Of a stretch of DNA of 64,000 nt, positions 4,567-60,966 are shown piece after piece. Positions within the stretch are counted from its first letter, which is position 1. Each line of letters opens with the position of its first letter. The stretch spans positions 124,001-188,000 of the forward strand of contig CM074804.1 of the NCBI GenBank assembly GCA_037447605.1. The letters run 5' to 3'. Source of the DNA: Zygnema circumcarinatum SAG 698-1b (Eukaryota > Plantae > Zygnematophyceae). The position numbers and the translations under genes were made by a program. Under the pieces are notes generated by a model. The model did no database searches. It saw only the letters and a program-made list of their open reading frames with translations, and was not told the origin of the DNA.

Positions 4567-7500
4567 ATGGCCGCGCAGCAATGCAGCAGTTTTTTGAAGC
4601 ACTTTCCTATTCAAACTTCTGCAAAATCCAATGAAACGTCCTGCAGAACATCCGCTGCATTAAACTCTAGCTTGAAGGCGGCAAAAGCTGCCTTGACCTT
4701 CACGTACAGAGCTCCAAACTATGGCTGGAATGCCAGAGACGTAATGCAACAGCAGCAAAGTGAGCTCAAGTTGATGACTATGAGAGGACATGCGTCATCA
4801 TCATCATCAGCAGCAGCAGCATGCAGAGCAATAGCATCCGTGGCTTCTGGAACTGTTTCCCGAGTCGGTGCAACAGAAACTGGGAGTGTGGCTGTGGCTG
4901 ATCTGGTGGCTGTGGCTGAGTCTGCTGCAAAGAGAGGTGCTGCTGTGAGTTACATTTTTTTGGAACCACTTTCCTTACTTTACTGTGCCCTTCGCTTGCT
5001 GCTCGGTTTCGTGATAGCTGTGAGAAAGCCCTTTTCTAGATGAAAATACCGCGTGTTGGAATGAAGCTCCATTTCTTTCATGACCAGCTCGGATATGAAG
5101 CATCTATTACCGCTTTAAGTTGTCAGTATTTTAAAAAACAGGTTGATGCAGTTGGTATTTTGGCGCTTTTGAAGGTTTTCATATTCGAAGAGCTCAACAG
5201 ATTGCCTGACATAGGAAATAAAACTAGATTTGGAGACTGTGCAGCTCATGCACTGGATTTCCATCATATGACAGGTGATTCTGGAGGCCGTGGATAAACC
5301 TCGAAATATCACATACAAAGGTGCCACGGATCTTGTTACAGAGTAAGTGCCTTGTCTTTGTCTATCCATTTTTTGTCGTCCTTTTCTTTTCTTTTGCTGC
5401 AGCTGGTGAGTCTTCGGGCTTCCAAACTCATACGCAGTATGTCCACATTGGAAGTTAGCCCTTGAAATGCTTTAGGGCTTGAGTATAAGTTCAGGTTTGT
5501 TGAGGCTGAGCGGAGGGACCGGGGGTGATGCAGCACAGACCGCAACACAGAGCTGGCAGTGCTGGCAGAAATTCGTGAGCGCTTTCCCGACCATCTCCTG
5601 CTGGGAGAGGAGGGGGGAGTCAGCGGAGATGCTTCATCAGAGTATCTCTGGTGCATTGATCCACTTGGTACAATCATCTTCTCTCCCTTTTCTCTCGCAC
5701 CTGCCTTTGCTTCTTCCTCTCACTCTCTCAATCTTTGTCCCTCTCTACGCACATAGATACAGACTGCATTCTTCATGGTTTTGCTGCTTACTGGTTTTGC
5801 TGCACCTGAACAGATACTGTTGCTGCTGATGTTGATGACAGATGGTACAACCAATTTTGCGCACGGTTATCCATGTTTTGCAACATCCGTTGCAGTGCTC
5901 AGTAAAGGTCGGCCAGTTGCGGGTTGCGTGGTGAGAAATTCTACACGAACTTTACGCAGTAACTTCTGGAAGATCTCTAACCACACATAACCCGAAACGA
6001 ACCTTATTTCGACCTAAAATACAAACTCTGACAACCGAAGGACCCTTACAATCCTAGAGAATCAAATGCATGAGAACGGAGAATATATGAATCACCTTCA
6101 GTTTCATTTTCGCGATTTTGCAAAACAAGCAAATCTTCTCATCTGTAGCTAGAGAAATGTTGACGCAGGTGGAATTTTCAGGTGGCCCAGGTCATTGGAT
6201 AACTCGTGTTTTCACGGCTGGTTCAGGTACTGTTGAACTGGCATCAAGAAAAAGAAATGCAATACTATCCAAGTTCTAAATAAGCCAAGTGAAGCTTACA
6301 GTATAATTGAATCATGAGCAATTTAAGTTCCATGCACACTTTTTTGTTTAACGGTTAGAGTGTTCTATGTGCAGGAACTGGTGCATTCTGTGACGGAAAG
6401 CCTATTCATGTCAGTCTTACTGACAAGGTATGCAATGTCTTTCTGATCCCTTTCCTCGATCACATGCGAACTTGGCCTCTACCCGTCATACTTCATTTAG
6501 ACTTTCAACATGGGATAGATAGCCTCCCGACAATCCTTGGAATGACATAATAAAAGTGGTAAATCATGCAGTCCGTGCCATTTAACTTCTTTCTTTATCC
6601 ACGGTTCCGAATACTCAATGCTGATTCCAGCTGCCTATTTGGGAAATTCAGGTGGAAAAGTCTCTTCTTGTTACGGGGTTCGGTTATGAACATGATGAAG
6701 CATGGTCAACGAATCTGGAGCTTTTTAAACACTTTACTGACGTGAGCCGGGTAAGCGCCAGCGCAATAACGTTGAACATCATCCAAATGTTTCCTATACA
6801 TTGTCGTAATTTCTGAAGGGAGCAGGAAAGGCCCGGGCATTGACGGACGAGGGGAGTGTGGGAGGCTGGCTGATGAGGAAGAAAGAGGGGAGATGGGAGA
6901 GCGATTGCAGAGAACAATAACTAGCCTTTTTACTATCTCTCGTCGGGGTTGTGTTGGCCCTATCAGGGAGTGAGGAGGCTCGGCGCAGCGGCTGTGGACA
7001 TGTGCCATGTGGCTCTCGGCATTGTGGATGGATACTGGGAGTACCGACTCAAACCCTGGGATATGGCTGCAGGCGTTCTTGTAAGCTCACTGTACTTTGT
7101 GGTCAGAAAGGTCTAGAGATGGAGTGGGAAGGAAGGAAATGGATGAGGCAGGCAGGAGTTTTGAGACAGGAAATTTGCAGTCCGTTATCAAATGACAATA
7201 GCTAGACAACACGTTGAATGTGCGAGATTGATTGAAATTTAAAATAATATGAAGGCAGCAGTTTGTCCTGTTGGGTTCTGCCGAAGGGAAGTTAACCATG
7301 GACAAAAAGTGAGGATTTCTAAGCTCAAATATTTCTTTCTTTCACATTACCTTGGTTTTCATGTTTGTTTGTTTGTCTCAGATAGTAGAAGAGGCTGGTG
7401 GCATTGTGACACGGATGGATGGTGGAGAATTTAACGTTTTCGATCGATCCGTGCTCGTTTCCAATGCAGCCCTCCACTCACAGGTGTGGTCCAATTCCTC

Positions 7501-7959
7501 CTGTTTTGTCCAAAGTAGTTTAGACTAGTACCCAGCTTATACCGAAAGGACCAAAAGTGTCCTTCAGCAGGGTTGTCTTGGACTGGAGATGATGTCGTTT
7601 GCTGGGGTCTCCTACCGATATCCCAACATGGACTGGATTTTGTACTTCAATCTATCCCTATGCTTCATCATGCTCCTGCGCTCTTCTGTTTCCGTTACCC
7701 TCCTCTCCTCCCTTTTTGCCTCTCATCACTTCTTGCCTTCTTGTCTTGTCTCCCAACCGTCTCTCCTACTCTTTCCCCTCCGCTCCTACTGGACTGGCGC
7801 AAAATTCCCCAATTCGTCCTAAAGACAACTTGACATCTTTGGACTGTTTGACCAATGCAGATTGTGGCGCAAACTGGCCCCGCCACAGAGCGGCTGATCA
7901 GTAAAAACTTCGACTTTTCCTTGTGGTTCAAACCTGCGGATTATGTCTGCCCTTTCTGA
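4567..7959 (+). CDS. IMPL1: Plastid inositol monophosphatase-like 1, 10 exons: 4567-4944, 5275-5342, 5534-5667, 5842-5930, 6169-6226, 6375-6427, 6652-6750, 6967-7080, 7382-7483, 7861-7959
   Basis: Spliced protein has [52 protein letters not shown] and C-terminal DFSLWFKP. N-terminus is transit-peptide-like. All junctions GT-AG. Confidence 0.95.
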
Positions 7960-8509
7960 GTAAGAGAAGCGTGGCGTTGTGGGATCTCATTCAATTTATA
8001 TCATGGCAGGCATCACTTTTTCTAATCTGAAACTGCTTATCAAATAGGTGTAGAGCAATTACAAAAATCCGGTTGCAAATGAGGAGAGTGAGGAGTCTTT
8101 GGAAATGATCCTCCAGTCCACCGCAAGCAGCAGTGCTTGGACGTCGATGTCTTTGAACTAGAATGCTAAGATGTTTATTTGGTGGTTTTTAAACAGTCTG
8201 CACACAATAGAGTAATGTTCCAGGGCATAGTGAAACGCGAAAGCTCATTCAACCAAAAAGGAGAAGATTAGATCCAAAACCACATGTTTTAATTGTCTTT
8301 CGTAACAATATGAAAAGAAACATATTTCTCTCTGTCGTTAATTTCTATCTTTCAACCCTAGGATATGAATGAGAGCAAGAACTTGTCCAAGGCGAGAGGC
8401 TGAGAGTGGAGGACGCTATATGCCACCTCCCATCCGCCCCTCCGATTGCGAAAAAGCAAGGCTACTTTTCTTCTATTCGCACTTTTTCCATGCGAGGATA
8501 AAAAGCCCC

Positions 8510-8580
8510 CGTGCCCCTGCTCAGACCTGTTCCATACCAACGTGGGTACTTACGAAACACGTCGTCATGCATCGCAACCT
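8510..8580 (-). promoter_or_regulatory. Eukaryotic SECIS element (form 2) in the thioredoxin reductase 3' UTR
   Basis: Minus strand reads AUGAC-GACGUGUUUCGU-AA-GUACCCACGUUGGU-AUGGAACAGGUC-UGAG. AUGA core at 8568-8565, helix II with 11 of 12 positions paired, AA at 8551-8550, ACC/GGU mini-stem, UGAG at 8523-8520. Confidence 0.9.
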
Positions 8581-8778
8581 TTCCCCTGCCAAAGCTCTCC
8601 GCTCGGTACAGAAGGCCCGCTGTCCGCTCCGTTCACAGCAACTCTCTCACGGAGGACGGTCTTCTCTCTCTATCTCCCAAGAAGACACTCTCACTCAGAG
8701 CCGAGCGTGAGTGAGAGAGAGACAGAGAAACCGCCAATGAGTGAGGAGGATGCCGTGACCGGTGACGTGACAGCGGGC

Positions 8779-14041
<5,263 letters not shown>

Positions 14042-14668
14042 CGCCTCTGCCACTGAGAATCCGCCGCTCTCACGTGTGAATCAACCGTATCAAGAAAACC
14101 GAGAACCATCAACATCCAAAATAATCTTCACCTCCTACATTACCACTTATTTAATAAACCCTAATAAAAAACTTTAAAAAAATAGAAGACGCACCTCTAA
14201 CAAAACCCCTAATTCTGACGCCCTGAAACTTGCTTTAACACCGCTGTTTAATTCCCATTAATTATTTCAATTTCCCCGCCCCCCCCTTCCCCTCCCCCTC
14301 CCCCCCCCCCCCACTTCCATTCCTTTCAGTTTAAAGGTGCGGAGGCCGCACCCGTTCCCATGGCGCGTCGCCCACCAATCACATCCCTCCCGCCAGCATG
14401 CGCGACGACCTGCGCCAGCCGCCACGTGGCCCGAGCACGGGCAGTCTGCCGGAGCAACAGGATGCCTCACCCGGCCCCGCCCGCTGATCGATGCGGCCGG
14501 GAAGTCCCTCGACCCGCAACCTCTGACGGCGCAGGCGGCAGACTCGCCCCCCCTCACCCGAAACCCTCCCTCTCTCCCTTCCTCCCTCTCTCTCTTCCTT
14601 CCTCCCCCTCTCTTCCTTTGCCTACGATAATGTTGGAAGGAAGCCTTTATATGCGCTACGCCCTCGAT

Positions 14669-58398: not shown

Positions 58399-60966
58399 CT
58401 ATCTCTGCCATGCAATCTGGGCCATGTCCGGCTTCAGGAGCAGCACTTGAGCTGTTCTGACGCTCTGCGGCCTCCATGTCCATAGCAGGAGACGCCATGC
58501 CCTCTGCTGTGCCCCCATGGGGAGAGCTAAAGAGCAGCTCTCCGCCGAGCCCGCCACACAGGCCACCACTCTCAGCCTCTTCAACACATCCTGCAAGGGT
58601 TCAGCTAAACCCCTCCGAATGCTCTGCCCGTCGACCCACCCCCCCGGCTGCACGTCTGTCCCTCGCAGCAGCCGATGCCGCAATGTCATGAACATGCGCT
58701 GCGGGGAGGGGTCTCTTTCAAGATGCCTCACATACATCCATGCGCGGTAATGCTGCTCATTGCGATGACAAGGGCGGCCCCCAGGCATCAGCAAATAGCC
58801 CTTCTGCTGGGCTCCCTCGGACCCGTCTCCCTCCCTCACACAATGCTCTTGAATCACAATCGACATCCCATCCATCACCCGCCCCAATCCCTGCTCTGCT
58901 TCAAGCCCCCGGCTGCCTCCTTTCGACAGCATCAACTCGAACTCTATCAGCAAAAATGGCAGATAAAGCCGCGTAAGCATGGGCAGCTCAGGCGCCTTCC
59001 TCCCTGCATGCTTATCCCCTCTCTTCACCATTCCCCTCCTTACTCCGAACAGGTCTCCACTCTGCAGAGCATAAGCGCGCTGCGAGTCCTTCACCTTGTT
59101 CAATCGTAAAGGCAACTGCAGCTCTACTCTGCCCATCCATAGCTGAGGTCCTCCCCGAGAAGCATTCACAGTTGCAATTCCCGCCTGAACTTGCGCATGG
59201 AGCTCCGTTAAAGCTGCTTCTATTCGAGGGAGAGCTGTCAGCATTCCCACAGAATCTGAGCCACTTTCCATCCACTTCGTAATATGAGGACAATTCTTCC
59301 GATTTCGACTTTTGCACCGAATGGGGGGGCCTCTGGGGGGGGGAACCCATGTTTGCAAGAACCGCATTTGAAAACGATTAAGTCCCATGAGTGTGAACAT
59401 GGCCACTAACAGCCGCGTTTGTTCTCCCTGATCCACAGGGAGCTCCTTCTCTCCCCACACCACTCTTCGGAGGACTCCATCGATAAATCCCCGGCAGAGC
59501 TGCCCCGTAATGATCCCCCATTTCCGTCGTAACTGAACTAAATTTTCCGCACATGTATCCTCACAACTCTGTGATGCAAAGAAAGGGAGATCTGCAGGAG
59601 TAATCTTTACTGAAGGGTGCTGGTAGATTACTTCTGATTGCGGTACAAAAAAGGCCTTTCGCTTCTCGTAGCGGAGAGTGAGAGCAAGCTCCACATCTTG
59701 TCGAGTGAAACCTGCGAGAGTGTCCCACAGAACCGCTTCCCGCAGAAAGTCTCTGCGCACTAGTAAGCAGTGATCTTCCAAAAATGAATCCACTTCTCTA
59801 GCTGCGAGTCCTCCTGGCTCCACTTTACGCTCTGATTCTGCAAGATTTATGTACAGCTTTCCGTCGTTACTGTAATCGTCGAAACTGAGTTCGCGTGTGA
59901 ACCCGACATGTGGCTGCAAAGGCCACTCAGACTCCCCTGCTATTGCTGCTGCAGCCCCGCCCATGATTCGACTATTTTCAACACTTGAAGAACCTCCGGC
60001 GATCCCCGTTCCCATGCGGTGCCTTTCCCATATGAATGGAGCAAACACGTCTCCGTCGGAACAGTTTTCCGCGAAAGCATGGAGCTCATGTAGCCATTTG
60101 CGGTTGGCAGGCATCACATCGTTAAAGATAAAGAGACCGTACTTTGTCTTAATTCGATCCAAAGATGCATTTCTAGAGCTGTATCCGCTTGCGAACAGCC
60201 CTGCGTCCACCAACTCCAGTCGCGAACACTGACTTTCCTTTTCTAGCAAATACCTGCGTGTGTTGTTATCCATGGGGCCCGACATTGCGTAAATCACACG
60301 CACTAAGGGTGAACTCTTGAGCACCTCCTCCAGATGCATCTGAGCCATAGCAAAGCTGTGCTTTCCACTTATAATTATCGTCACGTCCTGCGCGATCCGC
60401 TTATCCTCCTTCGTCACATCCTCCGCCTCCTTCTCCGCCTCCCCCCTCCCCTTCCTCTCCTTCTCCCACCTTTCCATCTCCCGCAACCGCCCGCCCCTAA
60501 ATCCTCCCCCGTCCTCCAGTGCCCTCCCTCGCCCCCTATTACCCGCATCCCCCTTTCCATCCCCTCCTACCCCACTTCCAGCTCTCACCCCACCTCCCCC
60601 TTCCTTCCCCTCCCCCACTTCCCCCACTTTACCTCCCCTCCCCCCTCCTCCCCCTCGTCCTCTTCCCTCCCCCTCCCTCTCTCCTCCCCTCTCTTTTCCC
60701 CCCGCCGCTGCTCTCTCTTCCTCCCCACCTCCCTCCAGCGGAATGGCGTCTGCCGTCCGCAGCTGCAGGTGCGAGATGGGCCAATCGCCGGCATCGGGGT
60801 CGTCCGTGAGGTCGGTCAGCACCTCGATCTCGCGCCGGAGCAGCAGCAGGGACACGGCCACGGCCAGCAGCAGCAGCAGCGCGCCCACTGACACAGAGGG
60901 CTGCCAAAGCAGCAATGCCGGCCGCCGCCGGGCCCTCCGCCGCCCGGGGCTGTGCCCCCCGCTCAT
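58399..60966 (-). CDS. Intronless 855-aa type II membrane protein with a GT2/GT-A glycosyltransferase-like domain
   Basis: N-terminal TM segment and Gly/Glu-rich stem, then DVTIIIS, SRNASLDRIKTKYGLFIFNDV, WLHEL, FLEDHCLLVRRD, FFVPQSEVIY and LRRKWG, followed by an unassigned C-terminal region. Confidence 0.75.
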   Translation of the reverse strand: MSGGHSPGRRRARRRPALLLWQPSVSVGALLLLLAVAVSLLLLRREIEVLTDLTDDPDAGDWPISHLQLRTADAIPLEGGGEEERAAAGGKERGGEREGEGRGRGGGGGRGGKVGEVGEGKEGGGGVRAGSGVGGDGKGDAGNRGRGRALEDGGGFRGGRLREMERWEKERKGRGEAEKEAEDVTKEDKRIAQDVTIIISGKHSFAMAQMHLEEVLKSSPLVRVIYAMSGPMDNNTRRYLLEKESQCSRLELVDAGLFASGYSSRNASLDRIKTKYGLFIFNDVMPANRKWLHELHAFAENCSDGDVFAPFIWERHRMGTGIAGGSSSVENSRIMGGAAAAIAGESEWPLQPHVGFTRELSFDDYSNDGKLYINLAESERKVEPGGLAAREVDSFLEDHCLLVRRDFLREAVLWDTLAGFTRQDVELALTLRYEKRKAFFVPQSEVIYQHPSVKITPADLPFFASQSCEDTCAENLVQLRRKWGIITGQLCRGFIDGVLRRVVWGEKELPVDQGEQTRLLVAMFTLMGLNRFQMRFLQTWVPPPRGPPIRCKSRNRKNCPHITKWMESGSDSVGMLTALPRIEAALTELHAQVQAGIATVNASRGGPQLWMGRVELQLPLRLNKVKDSQRAYALQSGDLFGVRRGMVKRGDKHAGRKAPELPMLTRLYLPFLLIEFELMLSKGGSRGLEAEQGLGRVMDGMSIVIQEHCVREGDGSEGAQQKGYLLMPGGRPCHRNEQHYRAWMYVRHLERDPSPQRMFMTLRHRLLRGTDVQPGGWVDGQSIRRGLAEPLQDVLKRLRVVACVAGSAESCSLALPMGAQQRAWRLLLWTWRPQSVRTAQVLLLKPDMAQIAWQR

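What the first reader, a model, noticed from the sequence alone, without database searches (positions are those of the whole stretch)
8510..8580. Form-2 SECIS element about 215 nt downstream of the Sec codon
Seen on the minus strand: AUGAC / GACGUGUUUCGU / AA GU ACC CACGUU GGU / AUGGAACAGGUC / UGAG. This gives a tandem G.A quartet, a 12-position helix II (9 Watson-Crick, 2 G.U, 1 G/G mismatch), unpaired AA at the canonical distance and a 3-bp apical mini-stem. Established: this is the eukaryotic SECIS consensus. It is an independent second signal that the UGA is recoded. Helix I could not be resolved firmly by eye.
Basis: partly seen in the sequence, partly recalled or inferred. Interest (0 to 1): 0.8.

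Follow-up and report, generated by a model that had tools for sequence, protein, structure and literature searches.

The report
SECIS element of algal thioredoxin reductase
This RNA hairpin is very probably a working selenocysteine-insertion signal (SECIS) in the 3' UTR of an expressed thioredoxin reductase gene of a Closterium-like green alga. It is a correct catch of a well-known element, and a conserved second hairpin starts right after the stop codon.

Summary
Observation confirmed; interpretation supported.

**The element.**
- A simple SECIS descriptor finds it as the only hit in both strands of the window. Shuffles give 0.31 hits per 128 kb.

**The gene.**
- It lies 219 nt after the UGA of a spliced, expressed 15-exon high-Mr thioredoxin reductase gene ending ...KTGC-UGA-GGU-UAA.
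- The RNA contig holding the last coding exon runs unbroken through the element to at least 7858.

**Model scores.**
- Rfam SECIS_1 gives only 17.7 bits (gathering score 35). The matching elements of three relatives also fall below 35 (22-30 bits).
- A covariance model built from seven TR SECIS elements of other organisms, without the window, ranks this site first: 18.8 bits, E about 0.001.
- In the 11-sequence alignment 93% of cells pair, and 11 of 14 pairs show changes on both sides.

**Novelty.** Selenoproteins in streptophyte algae are already documented, and this scan has noted other SECIS elements elsewhere in the same genome. This is an ordinary new member of a known kind.

**More unusual.** A very stable 164-nt hairpin (8615-8778, z -7.3) starts on the first base after the stop codon, 6 nt after the UGA. 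It recurs in both Closterium-like relatives and in many Sec-TR mRNAs. It may be an SRE-like recoding helper; this is untested.

The parts
8779..14361 (-). High-Mr thioredoxin reductase coding region, 15 exons. Active site CVNVGC; C-terminus GC-U-G. Exons in plus-strand coordinates: 8779-8928, 9232-9309, 9626-9721, 10032-10124, 10545-10682, 11133-11198, 11396-11497, 11740-11838, 12151-12301, 12425-12519, 12730-12880, 13064-13184, 13536-13593, 13922-14052/3, and a first exon holding ATG 14361-14359.
   Evidence: Thirteen GT..AG joints are seen in RNA contigs and refined. The first exon was placed from a loose contig end. The last exon matches the C-terminus of solved TR/TGR structures at E 8.5e-15.
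8785..8787 (-). UGA read as selenocysteine, the penultimate codon. It is followed by GGU (8784-8782) and UAA (8781-8779).
   Evidence: The same TGA-GGN-stop ending (TAA in all but one locus, which has TAG) occurs in all 10 loci fetched for four relatives and in 11 metagenomic TR loci.
8615..8778 (-). Long, stable hairpin filling the 3' UTR between the stop codon and the SECIS. Its base helix is GCCCGCUGUC/GACAGCGGGC, and its first paired base is the first base after UAA (6 nt after the UGA).
   Evidence: MFE -93 kcal/mol, z -7.28, 0 of 200 shuffles as stable. Equivalent hairpins occur in L003 (z -7.5) and L001 (z -7.1). The anchored helix is in the top 1% of positions.
8520..8568 (-). SECIS core and apical part. 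AUGA 8568-8565; helix II 8563-8554 with 8533-8524; internal loop GUAA with AA at 8551-8550; helix III 8549-8545 with 8538-8534; apical loop 8544-8539; 3' core UGAG 8523-8520.
8496..8586 (-). Outer limits of the element if the predicted helix I forms (8586-8569 with 8514-8496). This pairing is weak, G.U-rich and not verified.
   Evidence: Constrained fold only. No conserved counterpart could be shown in L001 or L003.
7858..8778 (-). Transcribed 3' UTR, at least as far as the RNA contigs run. The true poly(A) site is not mapped.
   Evidence: A 1074-nt contig covers 7858-8931 in X1 and X6 at word depth 307 and 113. An 1824-nt contig in X2 runs on to about 7108, into the convergent gene.

Best explanation
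The hairpin at 8520-8568 (minus strand) is a type II (form 2) eukaryotic SECIS element. It sits in the 3' UTR of the mRNA for a selenocysteine-containing high-Mr thioredoxin reductase of a Closterium-like zygnematophycean alga.

**Shown here.**
- The gene is spliced and expressed.
- It ends GC-UGA-G-UAA.
- The element lies in the same RNA contig as the last coding exon.
- It has all the sequence hallmarks of a SECIS.
- It is conserved, with compensatory changes, in related algae and in Sec-TR genes of many other eukaryotes.

**Inferred from established knowledge of the eukaryotic Sec pathway.**
- The AUGA/GA core folds into a kink-turn with tandem sheared G.A pairs.
- That core binds SECIS-binding protein 2.
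- SBP2 recruits eEFSec carrying Sec-tRNA[Ser]Sec to a ribosome paused at UGA 8787-8785.
- Sec is inserted, one Gly is added, and translation ends at UAA.
- The product carries the redox-active Cys-Sec pair at its C-terminus.

**Added hypothesis, not shown.** The 164-nt hairpin that starts on the first base after the stop codon may shorten the effective UGA-to-SECIS distance from about 210 nt to about 50 nt. It may also act like a selenocysteine redefinition element, slowing termination at the UGA.
For: - **Sequence and geometry** are exact.
- **Chance.** It is the only descriptor hit in 128 kb, against 0.31 expected.
- **Rfam.** SECIS_1 aligns end to end at 17.7 bits. E is 1.2 for 451 nt times 4227 families, so about 3e-4 for this one family.
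- **Relatives under Rfam.** The SECIS elements found at the matching place in relatives score 30.2, 27.2 and 22.4 bits, also below the gathering score.
- **Independent model.** R2 was built from seven TR SECIS elements without the window. It puts 8518-8570(-) first in the window at 18.8 bits, E about 0.001; the next hit has E 0.15. Other SECIS candidates not used in training, all downstream of TR Sec codons, score 17-21 bits.
- **Covariation.** In the 11-sequence alignment 93.1% of cells pair, against 69% in shuffles and 26-46% when partners are slid. Eleven of 14 pairs have changes on both sides, and no shuffle of 500 reaches the observed covariation score.
- **Gene.** There are 13 GT..AG joints in RNA contigs. 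The last-exon contig 7858-8931 has depth 307, against 10-24 for unspliced intron contigs. The translation carries CVNVGC and GC-U-G. The last exon matches TR/TGR structures.
[quoted passage not shown] Sec-TXNRD is among the most widespread algal selenoproteins (PMC7539508).
Against: - The Rfam score is half the gathering score.
- Helix II has a G/G mismatch.
- The 3' core UGAG misses the W of the KGAW consensus.
- Helix I is only weakly predicted.
- The contigs are unstranded and give mean depth only. A convergent inositol-monophosphatase gene ends at 7528. So the TR poly(A) site is not mapped, and transcription of 8520-8568 on the TR strand is inferred rather than shown.
- E-values of the home-made models are rough, and the A8 alignment was fitted to the model's structure.
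- No SBP2 binding, selenium labelling or peptide evidence exists.
Confidence: 0.93

Rival explanations
1. The hairpin is a chance SECIS look-alike. The UGA is a true stop, so the enzyme ends at ...KTGC, two residues short and without selenium.
For: The Rfam score is below gathering. There is one mismatch in helix II, and helix I is weak.
Against: Chance expectation is about 0.002 per 3' UTR. The element is conserved, with compensatory changes, at the matching place in relatives. TGA-GGN-stop is conserved in every TR locus examined. An independent model ranks the site first in the window.
Confidence: 0.03
2. It is a relic SECIS. The element and the UGA are inherited but no longer decoded, because this lineage is losing selenocysteine use as land plants did.
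For: Zygnematophyceae are sister to land plants, which lost the machinery, and selenoprotein counts in streptophyte algae are low (PMC6627142).
Against: The gene is intact over 15 exons and strongly expressed. Core, AA and pairing are all kept in three diverged Closterium-like sequences. Notes from this scan report several other expressed selenoprotein genes in the same genome (I did not check them).
Confidence: 0.03
3. The working SECIS lies elsewhere in the long 3' UTR, and this hairpin is a secondary or inactive copy.
For: The 3' UTR is at least 920 nt long, and some selenoprotein mRNAs carry two SECIS elements.
Against: Neither the descriptor nor models R1 and R2 find a second candidate between 7858 and 8778. 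The only other R1 and R2 matches on this strand near the gene overlap the coding end at 8782-8817 and 8856-8882 and are weak. The relatives have a single element at the matching place.
Confidence: 0.01

Closest known systems
Eukaryotic SECIS element, type II / form 2 (Rfam RF00031 SECIS_1; SECISearch3 description, PMC3753652)
   Same: Location in the 3' UTR; AUGA...GA kink-turn core; helix II of 10 bp; unpaired AA in a 5' internal loop followed by a short helix III and a small apical loop. It is linked to a UGA at a known Sec position.
   Different: It scores 17.7 bits against a gathering score of 35. The 3' core is UGAG rather than KGAW. Helix II has one G/G mismatch. Helix I is not resolved.
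SECIS elements of Sec-thioredoxin reductase genes of other eukaryotes (Closterium sp. Naga37s-1 locus L003, Logan contig L001, metagenomic loci L004, L011, L013, L014, L016, L017, L027, L053)
   Same: Shared AUGACG start. The form-2 members share a 10-bp helix II with compensatory changes, two bases then AA, a 4-5 bp helix III and a 3' GA. The window scores in the same range under R2 as the members not used for training.
   Different: The window has a 6-nt apical loop and no 3' bulge base, where its two closest relatives have a 4-nt loop and a bulged C. Helix II sequence is only about half identical to theirs.
Selenocysteine redefinition element (SRE) of SELENON, and stem-loop SL1 of SELENOS (PMC3628699, PMC8704476)
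   Same: This comparison applies to the hairpin at 8615-8778, not to the SECIS. It is a stem-loop starting 6 nt after the Sec UGA, the spacing reported for the SELENON SRE. As in SELENOS, the UGA is the penultimate codon and the stem lies at the start of the 3' UTR.
   Different: It is far longer (164 nt here) than I remember the SELENON SRE and SELENOS SL1 to be; I did not check their sizes. No functional test exists. I found no paper describing such an element for thioredoxin reductase, but the key paper (Howard et al. 2005) was not readable here.

Membership tests
Eukaryotic SECIS element | Lies in the 3' UTR of an mRNA with an in-frame UGA at a position known to hold Sec | tested here: met
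   The gene is a spliced TR ending GC-UGA-G-UAA. The element is 219 nt downstream, in the same RNA contig as the last exon. The strand of that contig and the poly(A) site are not determined.
Eukaryotic SECIS element | Core: 5' (A/G)UGAN opposite 3' NGAN, able to form tandem G.A/A.G pairs (published consensus UGAN/KGAW) | tested here: met
   AUGAC at 8568-8564 lies opposite UGAG at 8523-8520. The last base G departs from W. The non-Watson-Crick geometry itself cannot be tested with these tools.
Eukaryotic SECIS element | Helix II of about 9-12 bp between the core and the conserved unpaired As | tested here: met
   Nine of 10 positions pair (8 Watson-Crick, 1 G.U, 1 G/G). The pairs covary across 11 TR SECIS elements.
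Eukaryotic SECIS element | Unpaired AA at 10-13 nt from AUGA | tested here: met
   AA at 8551-8550 lies 13 nt after AUGA. It aligns with the AA of all aligned form-2 relatives.
Eukaryotic SECIS element | Type II: an extra short helix III above the AA-containing internal loop | tested here: met
Helix III columns are 96% paired, with changes on both sides in all 4 pairs.
Eukaryotic SECIS element | Helix I below the core | tested here: inconclusive
   The constrained fold pairs 8586-8569 with 8514-8496, mostly through G.U and A-U pairs. L001 and L003 form other arrangements.
Eukaryotic SECIS element | Reaches the curated score of a SECIS covariance model | tested here: not met
   Rfam SECIS_1 gives 17.7 bits against a gathering score of 35. 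The matching elements of relatives also miss it at 22.4-30.2 bits, so the threshold is too strict for these algae. The independent TR-SECIS model R2 gives 18.8 bits, E about 0.001, top of the window. SECISearch3 could not be run.
Eukaryotic SECIS element | Binds SBP2 and directs Sec insertion at UGA | not testable with these tools
   This needs a reporter assay, a gel shift, 75Se labelling or mass spectrometry.
Selenocysteine redefinition element (SRE-like stem-loop) | Stable stem-loop starting a few nt (6 in SELENON, 9 in SELENOS) 3' of the Sec UGA | tested here: met
   The hairpin at 8778-8615 starts 6 nt after the UGA, with z -7.28. It still starts there when 45 nt of coding sequence are included in the fold.
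Selenocysteine redefinition element (SRE-like stem-loop) | Conserved in orthologues | tested here: met
   Hairpins are present in L003 and L001 with z -7.5 and -7.1. In 12 of 14 Sec-TR spacers the first base after the stop is the first paired base. An uninterrupted helix anchored there is in the top 5% of positions in 8 of 18 loci, with rough combined p about 4e-8. The three long hairpins cannot be aligned, so no column-wise covariation test was possible.
Selenocysteine redefinition element (SRE-like stem-loop) | Raises UGA recoding or lowers termination | not testable with these tools
   This needs reporter assays with stem-breaking and stem-restoring mutants.

The most novel reading that the evidence does not exclude
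The SECIS may not act alone. A structured element starting on the first base after the stop codon, 6 nt after the Sec UGA, may be a conserved and so far undescribed SRE-like recoding helper of selenocysteine thioredoxin reductase mRNAs across eukaryotes. In Closterium-like algae it has grown into a 160-215 nt hairpin that also folds away most of the spacer between the UGA and the SECIS.
Probability: 0.3. Interest if true: 0.6.

Novelty: new member of a known kind. Interest (0 to 1): 0.3.

Why it matters
- **Gene model.** The element confirms that the UGA of this thioredoxin reductase gene should be annotated as selenocysteine. In the related public Closterium genome the last exon is filed as a 71-residue unnamed protein.
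- **Biology.** It adds a well-supported Sec-TR with its SECIS to the Zygnematophyceae, the algae closest to land plants. Land plants lost selenocysteine altogether.
- **Method.** Rfam's SECIS_1 gathering score misses true algal SECIS elements.
- **New question.** The conserved hairpin after the stop codon would matter more if it is functional. It would suggest that penultimate-codon Sec insertion in TR uses a local recoding structure as well as the distant SECIS.

Tried and rejected
- **Rfam at gathering thresholds.** It found nothing in the window. Only the E-value mode showed the SECIS_1 match.
- **Other weak Rfam hits.** MIR538, mir-67 and SNORA64 hits at 8626-8765 are generic responses to the long hairpin. 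All are far below their gathering scores.
- **Plain MAFFT alignment of nine diverse TR SECIS elements.** It misaligned the 3' arms and was not used. Structure-aware alignments from cmsearch were used instead.
- **Two-sequence model R1.** It ranked the site first, but only at E 0.17 for the whole window.
- **Second-best R2 hit at 58763-58824(+).** At 12.5 bits and E 0.15 it has no AA at the right place, so I rejected it as a SECIS.
- **The search for homologous proteins with the 47-residue last exon.** It returned only two proteins, so close relatives are few.
- **SECIS in other relatives.** I could not locate one downstream of L005/L006, L007, L010 or L012 with confidence.
- **Three-way alignment of the long hairpins.** It was uninformative because the sequences are not alignable.
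- **Control for the hairpin.** Cys-type TR homologues were sought among the metagenomic loci. Only glutathione reductases and one Plasmodium-type TR turned up.
- **Literature.** Howard et al. 2005 and 2007 on SREs were not held in the library. So I cannot say whether a TR stem-loop was already listed there.

Full report
**What is in the sequence**

Read on the minus strand, the stretch 8568-8520 contains these parts in order:
- AUGA (8568-8565), then C.
- GACGUGUUUC (8563-8554).
- GU, then AA (8551-8550).
- GUACC (8549-8545).
- CACGUU (8544-8539).
- GGUAU (8538-8534).
- GGAACAGGUC (8533-8524).
- UGAG (8523-8520).

Upstream, the same strand reads ...AAG ACG GGU UGC UGA GGU UAA. The UGA is at 8787-8785 and the UAA at 8781-8779. 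From U of UGA to A of AUGA is 219 nt.

**Is it more than chance?**

I wrote a simple SECIS descriptor. It requires ATGA, AA 10-13 nt later, a 3' GA, and at least 9 of 10 pairs in helix II.
- It hits only this site in both strands of the 64-kb window.
- 200 dinucleotide-preserving shuffles give 0.31 hits per 128 kb.
- That is about 0.002 for a 900-nt 3' UTR.

**The gene**

Contigs from three public runs of the same organism join 13 introns, all GT..AG on the minus strand.

The spliced reading frame is a complete high-Mr thioredoxin reductase. It has the CVNVGC active site and the C-terminus ...KTGC-U-G.

A loose contig end places a further first exon with the ATG at 14361-14359.

The last exon matches the C-terminus of solved thioredoxin and thioredoxin-glutathione reductases at E 8.5e-15. 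The alignment ends exactly at the Cys that precedes Sec.

**Is the element in the mRNA?**

- The contig holding the last coding exon runs unbroken from 8931 to 7858 in two runs. It is 1074 nt long, with mean word depth 307 and 113.
- In a third run it runs on to about 7108.
- Unspliced intron contigs have depth 7-26.

So most of that contig is at exon level, and the 3' UTR is at least about 920 nt long.

Two caveats remain. The contigs are unstranded and give only mean depth. A convergent inositol-monophosphatase-family gene ends at 7528. The poly(A) site is therefore not mapped.

**Model scores**

*Rfam*
- At gathering thresholds Rfam finds nothing in the window.
- In E-value mode SECIS_1 aligns end to end with 8577-8511(-) at 17.7 bits, against a gathering score of 35.
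- The E-value is 1.2 for 451 nt times 4227 families, which is about 3e-4 for this single family.
- The threshold is too strict for these algae. The matching elements of three relatives score 30.2, 27.2 and 22.4 bits.

*An independent model*
1. I built model R1 from the two closest relatives.
2. I used R1 to collect TR SECIS elements from other loci in a structure-aware alignment.
3. I rebuilt the model as R2 from seven sequences, none from the window.

With filters off, R2 ranks 8518-8570(-) first in the whole window at 18.8 bits, E about 0.001. The runner-up has E 0.15.

Three SECIS candidates that were not used for training also lie downstream of TR Sec codons. They score 17.2-20.6 bits, the same range as the window.

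**Relatives and covariation**

A search of 1.84 billion representative proteins with the 47-residue last exon returned many proteins that end exactly at ...GC.

The two closest are:
- P0002, from Closterium sp. Naga37s-1, 74% identical.
- P0001, from a Logan assembly, 79% identical.

Their contigs read TGA-GGC-TAA. Each has one SECIS, 296 and 283 nt after the UGA, with the same build:
- AUGACG.
- A 10-bp helix II.
- Two bases, then AA.
- A short helix III.
- A 3' GA.

Helix II differs at most positions, yet it stays paired apart from one mismatch in each sequence.

The model-fitted alignment holds 11 TR SECIS elements, including the window. Its pair counts are:
- 93.1% of cells form standard pairs. 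Shuffles give 69%, and sliding the partners gives 26-46%.
- 11 of 14 pairs show changes on both sides.
- No shuffle of 500 reaches the observed covariation score.

The alignment was fitted to the model's structure, which favours pairing. The slid controls and the raw sequences show the same picture.

The relatives support a different partition:
- A 10-bp helix II.
- A 5' internal loop GUAA.
- A 4-5 bp helix III.
- A 6-nt apical loop.

The two folds have almost the same energy, -15.1 and -15.5 kcal/mol.

The 3' core UGAG misses the last letter of the published UGAN/KGAW consensus (PMC3753652). Several relatives deviate there too.

Helix I is only weakly predicted, as 8586-8569 pairing with 8514-8496, rich in G.U. 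I could not show that it is conserved.

**How it most likely works**

*Shown:* an expressed TR mRNA with a penultimate UGA and a conserved, covarying type II SECIS downstream of it.

*Inferred from the established eukaryotic pathway:*
1. The AUGA/GA core forms a kink-turn.
2. The kink-turn binds SBP2.
3. SBP2 brings eEFSec with Sec-tRNA to the ribosome at the UGA.
4. Sec is inserted, Gly is added, and UAA ends the chain.
5. The product carries the Cys-Sec redox centre.

**A second structure**

The 3' UTR between the stop codon and the SECIS folds into one long hairpin, 8778-8615.
- MFE is -93 kcal/mol and z is -7.28.
- None of 200 shuffles is as stable.
- Its first paired base is the first base after UAA, 6 nt after the UGA.
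- This holds when 45 nt of coding sequence are added to the fold.

The two Closterium-like relatives have their own long hairpins at the same place, with z -7.5 and -7.1. The three sequences cannot be aligned.

Looking wider:
- In 12 of 14 Sec-TR spacers from varied eukaryotes the fold starts on the first base after the stop. Base helices include GCCUGCUGCUGCA/UGCAGUAGCAGGC and GCCUUCUCAAACUU/AAGUUUGAGAAGGC.
- An uninterrupted helix anchored exactly there is in the top 5% of all nearby positions in 8 of 18 loci.
- The rough combined p is about 4e-8. The positions are not independent.

The spacing equals that reported for the SELENON redefinition element. The position at the start of the 3' UTR after a penultimate UGA recalls SL1 of SELENOS (PMC3628699; PMC8704476).

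I found no paper describing such an element for thioredoxin reductase. The founding SRE papers were not readable here.

A role in recoding, or in bringing the SECIS close to the UGA, is a hypothesis only.

**Comparison with what is known, and novelty**

- Sec-TXNRD is among the most widespread algal selenoproteins (PMC7539508).
- No paper in the library links SECIS and Closterium.
- Notes from this scan already list SECIS elements and selenoprotein genes (SelH, SelU, SelT, GPX) on other pieces of the same genome.

The element is therefore a sound but ordinary new member of a known kind. The hairpin after the stop codon is the only part that might be new.

**Verdict**

- Observation: confirmed.
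- Interpretation: supported.
- Confidence that this is the working SECIS of a Sec-TR mRNA: 0.93.
- Interest: 0.3.

Noticed in passing
window 8615-8778 (-); L003 2301-2481; L001 2211-2426: A very stable long hairpin (z about -7 in all three) starts on the first base after the TR stop codon, 6 nt after the Sec UGA. Shorter stems anchored at the same base occur in many Sec-TR 3' UTRs of other eukaryotes, and the bases UAA-GCC after the stop are widely conserved. It may be an SRE-like recoding element.
   Followed up: partly
L003 2001-2294 (Closterium sp. Naga37s-1, GCA_947471745.1): The public annotation carries only a 71-residue 'unnamed protein product' made of intron read-through plus the last TR exon, stopping at the Sec UGA. 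The selenoprotein gene appears to be mis-annotated there.
   Followed up: partly
window 6949-7528 (+): A convergent inositol-monophosphatase-family gene (Pfam PF00459, E 5.8e-13) ends at 7528. One RNA contig (X2, 1824 nt) runs from about 7108 to 8931, so the 3' ends of the two genes abut or overlap.
   Followed up: partly
window 10475-10484: A 10-base run of N (assembly gap) lies inside a TR intron (10125-10544), next to proline-codon-rich, CT-rich low-complexity sequence. RNA contigs seem to be cut there.
   Followed up: no
window 8902-9260 and other introns of the TR gene: Low-depth unspliced contigs (depth 7-26, against 110-490 for spliced ones) cover several introns in the same runs. They could be pre-mRNA, intron retention or DNA carry-over.
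   Followed up: no
window 58763-58824 (+): This is the second-best match to the TR-SECIS model R2 (12.5 bits, E 0.15). It is GC-rich, has AUGAC and a 3' GGAC, but no AA at the proper distance. It is probably chance.
   Followed up: partly
L004 2376-2417; L016 1714-1756: Some Sec-TR genes of other organisms carry a type I SECIS, with AA in the apical loop and no helix III, where the Closterium-like genes carry type II. Both forms occur within one orthologous gene family.
   Followed up: no
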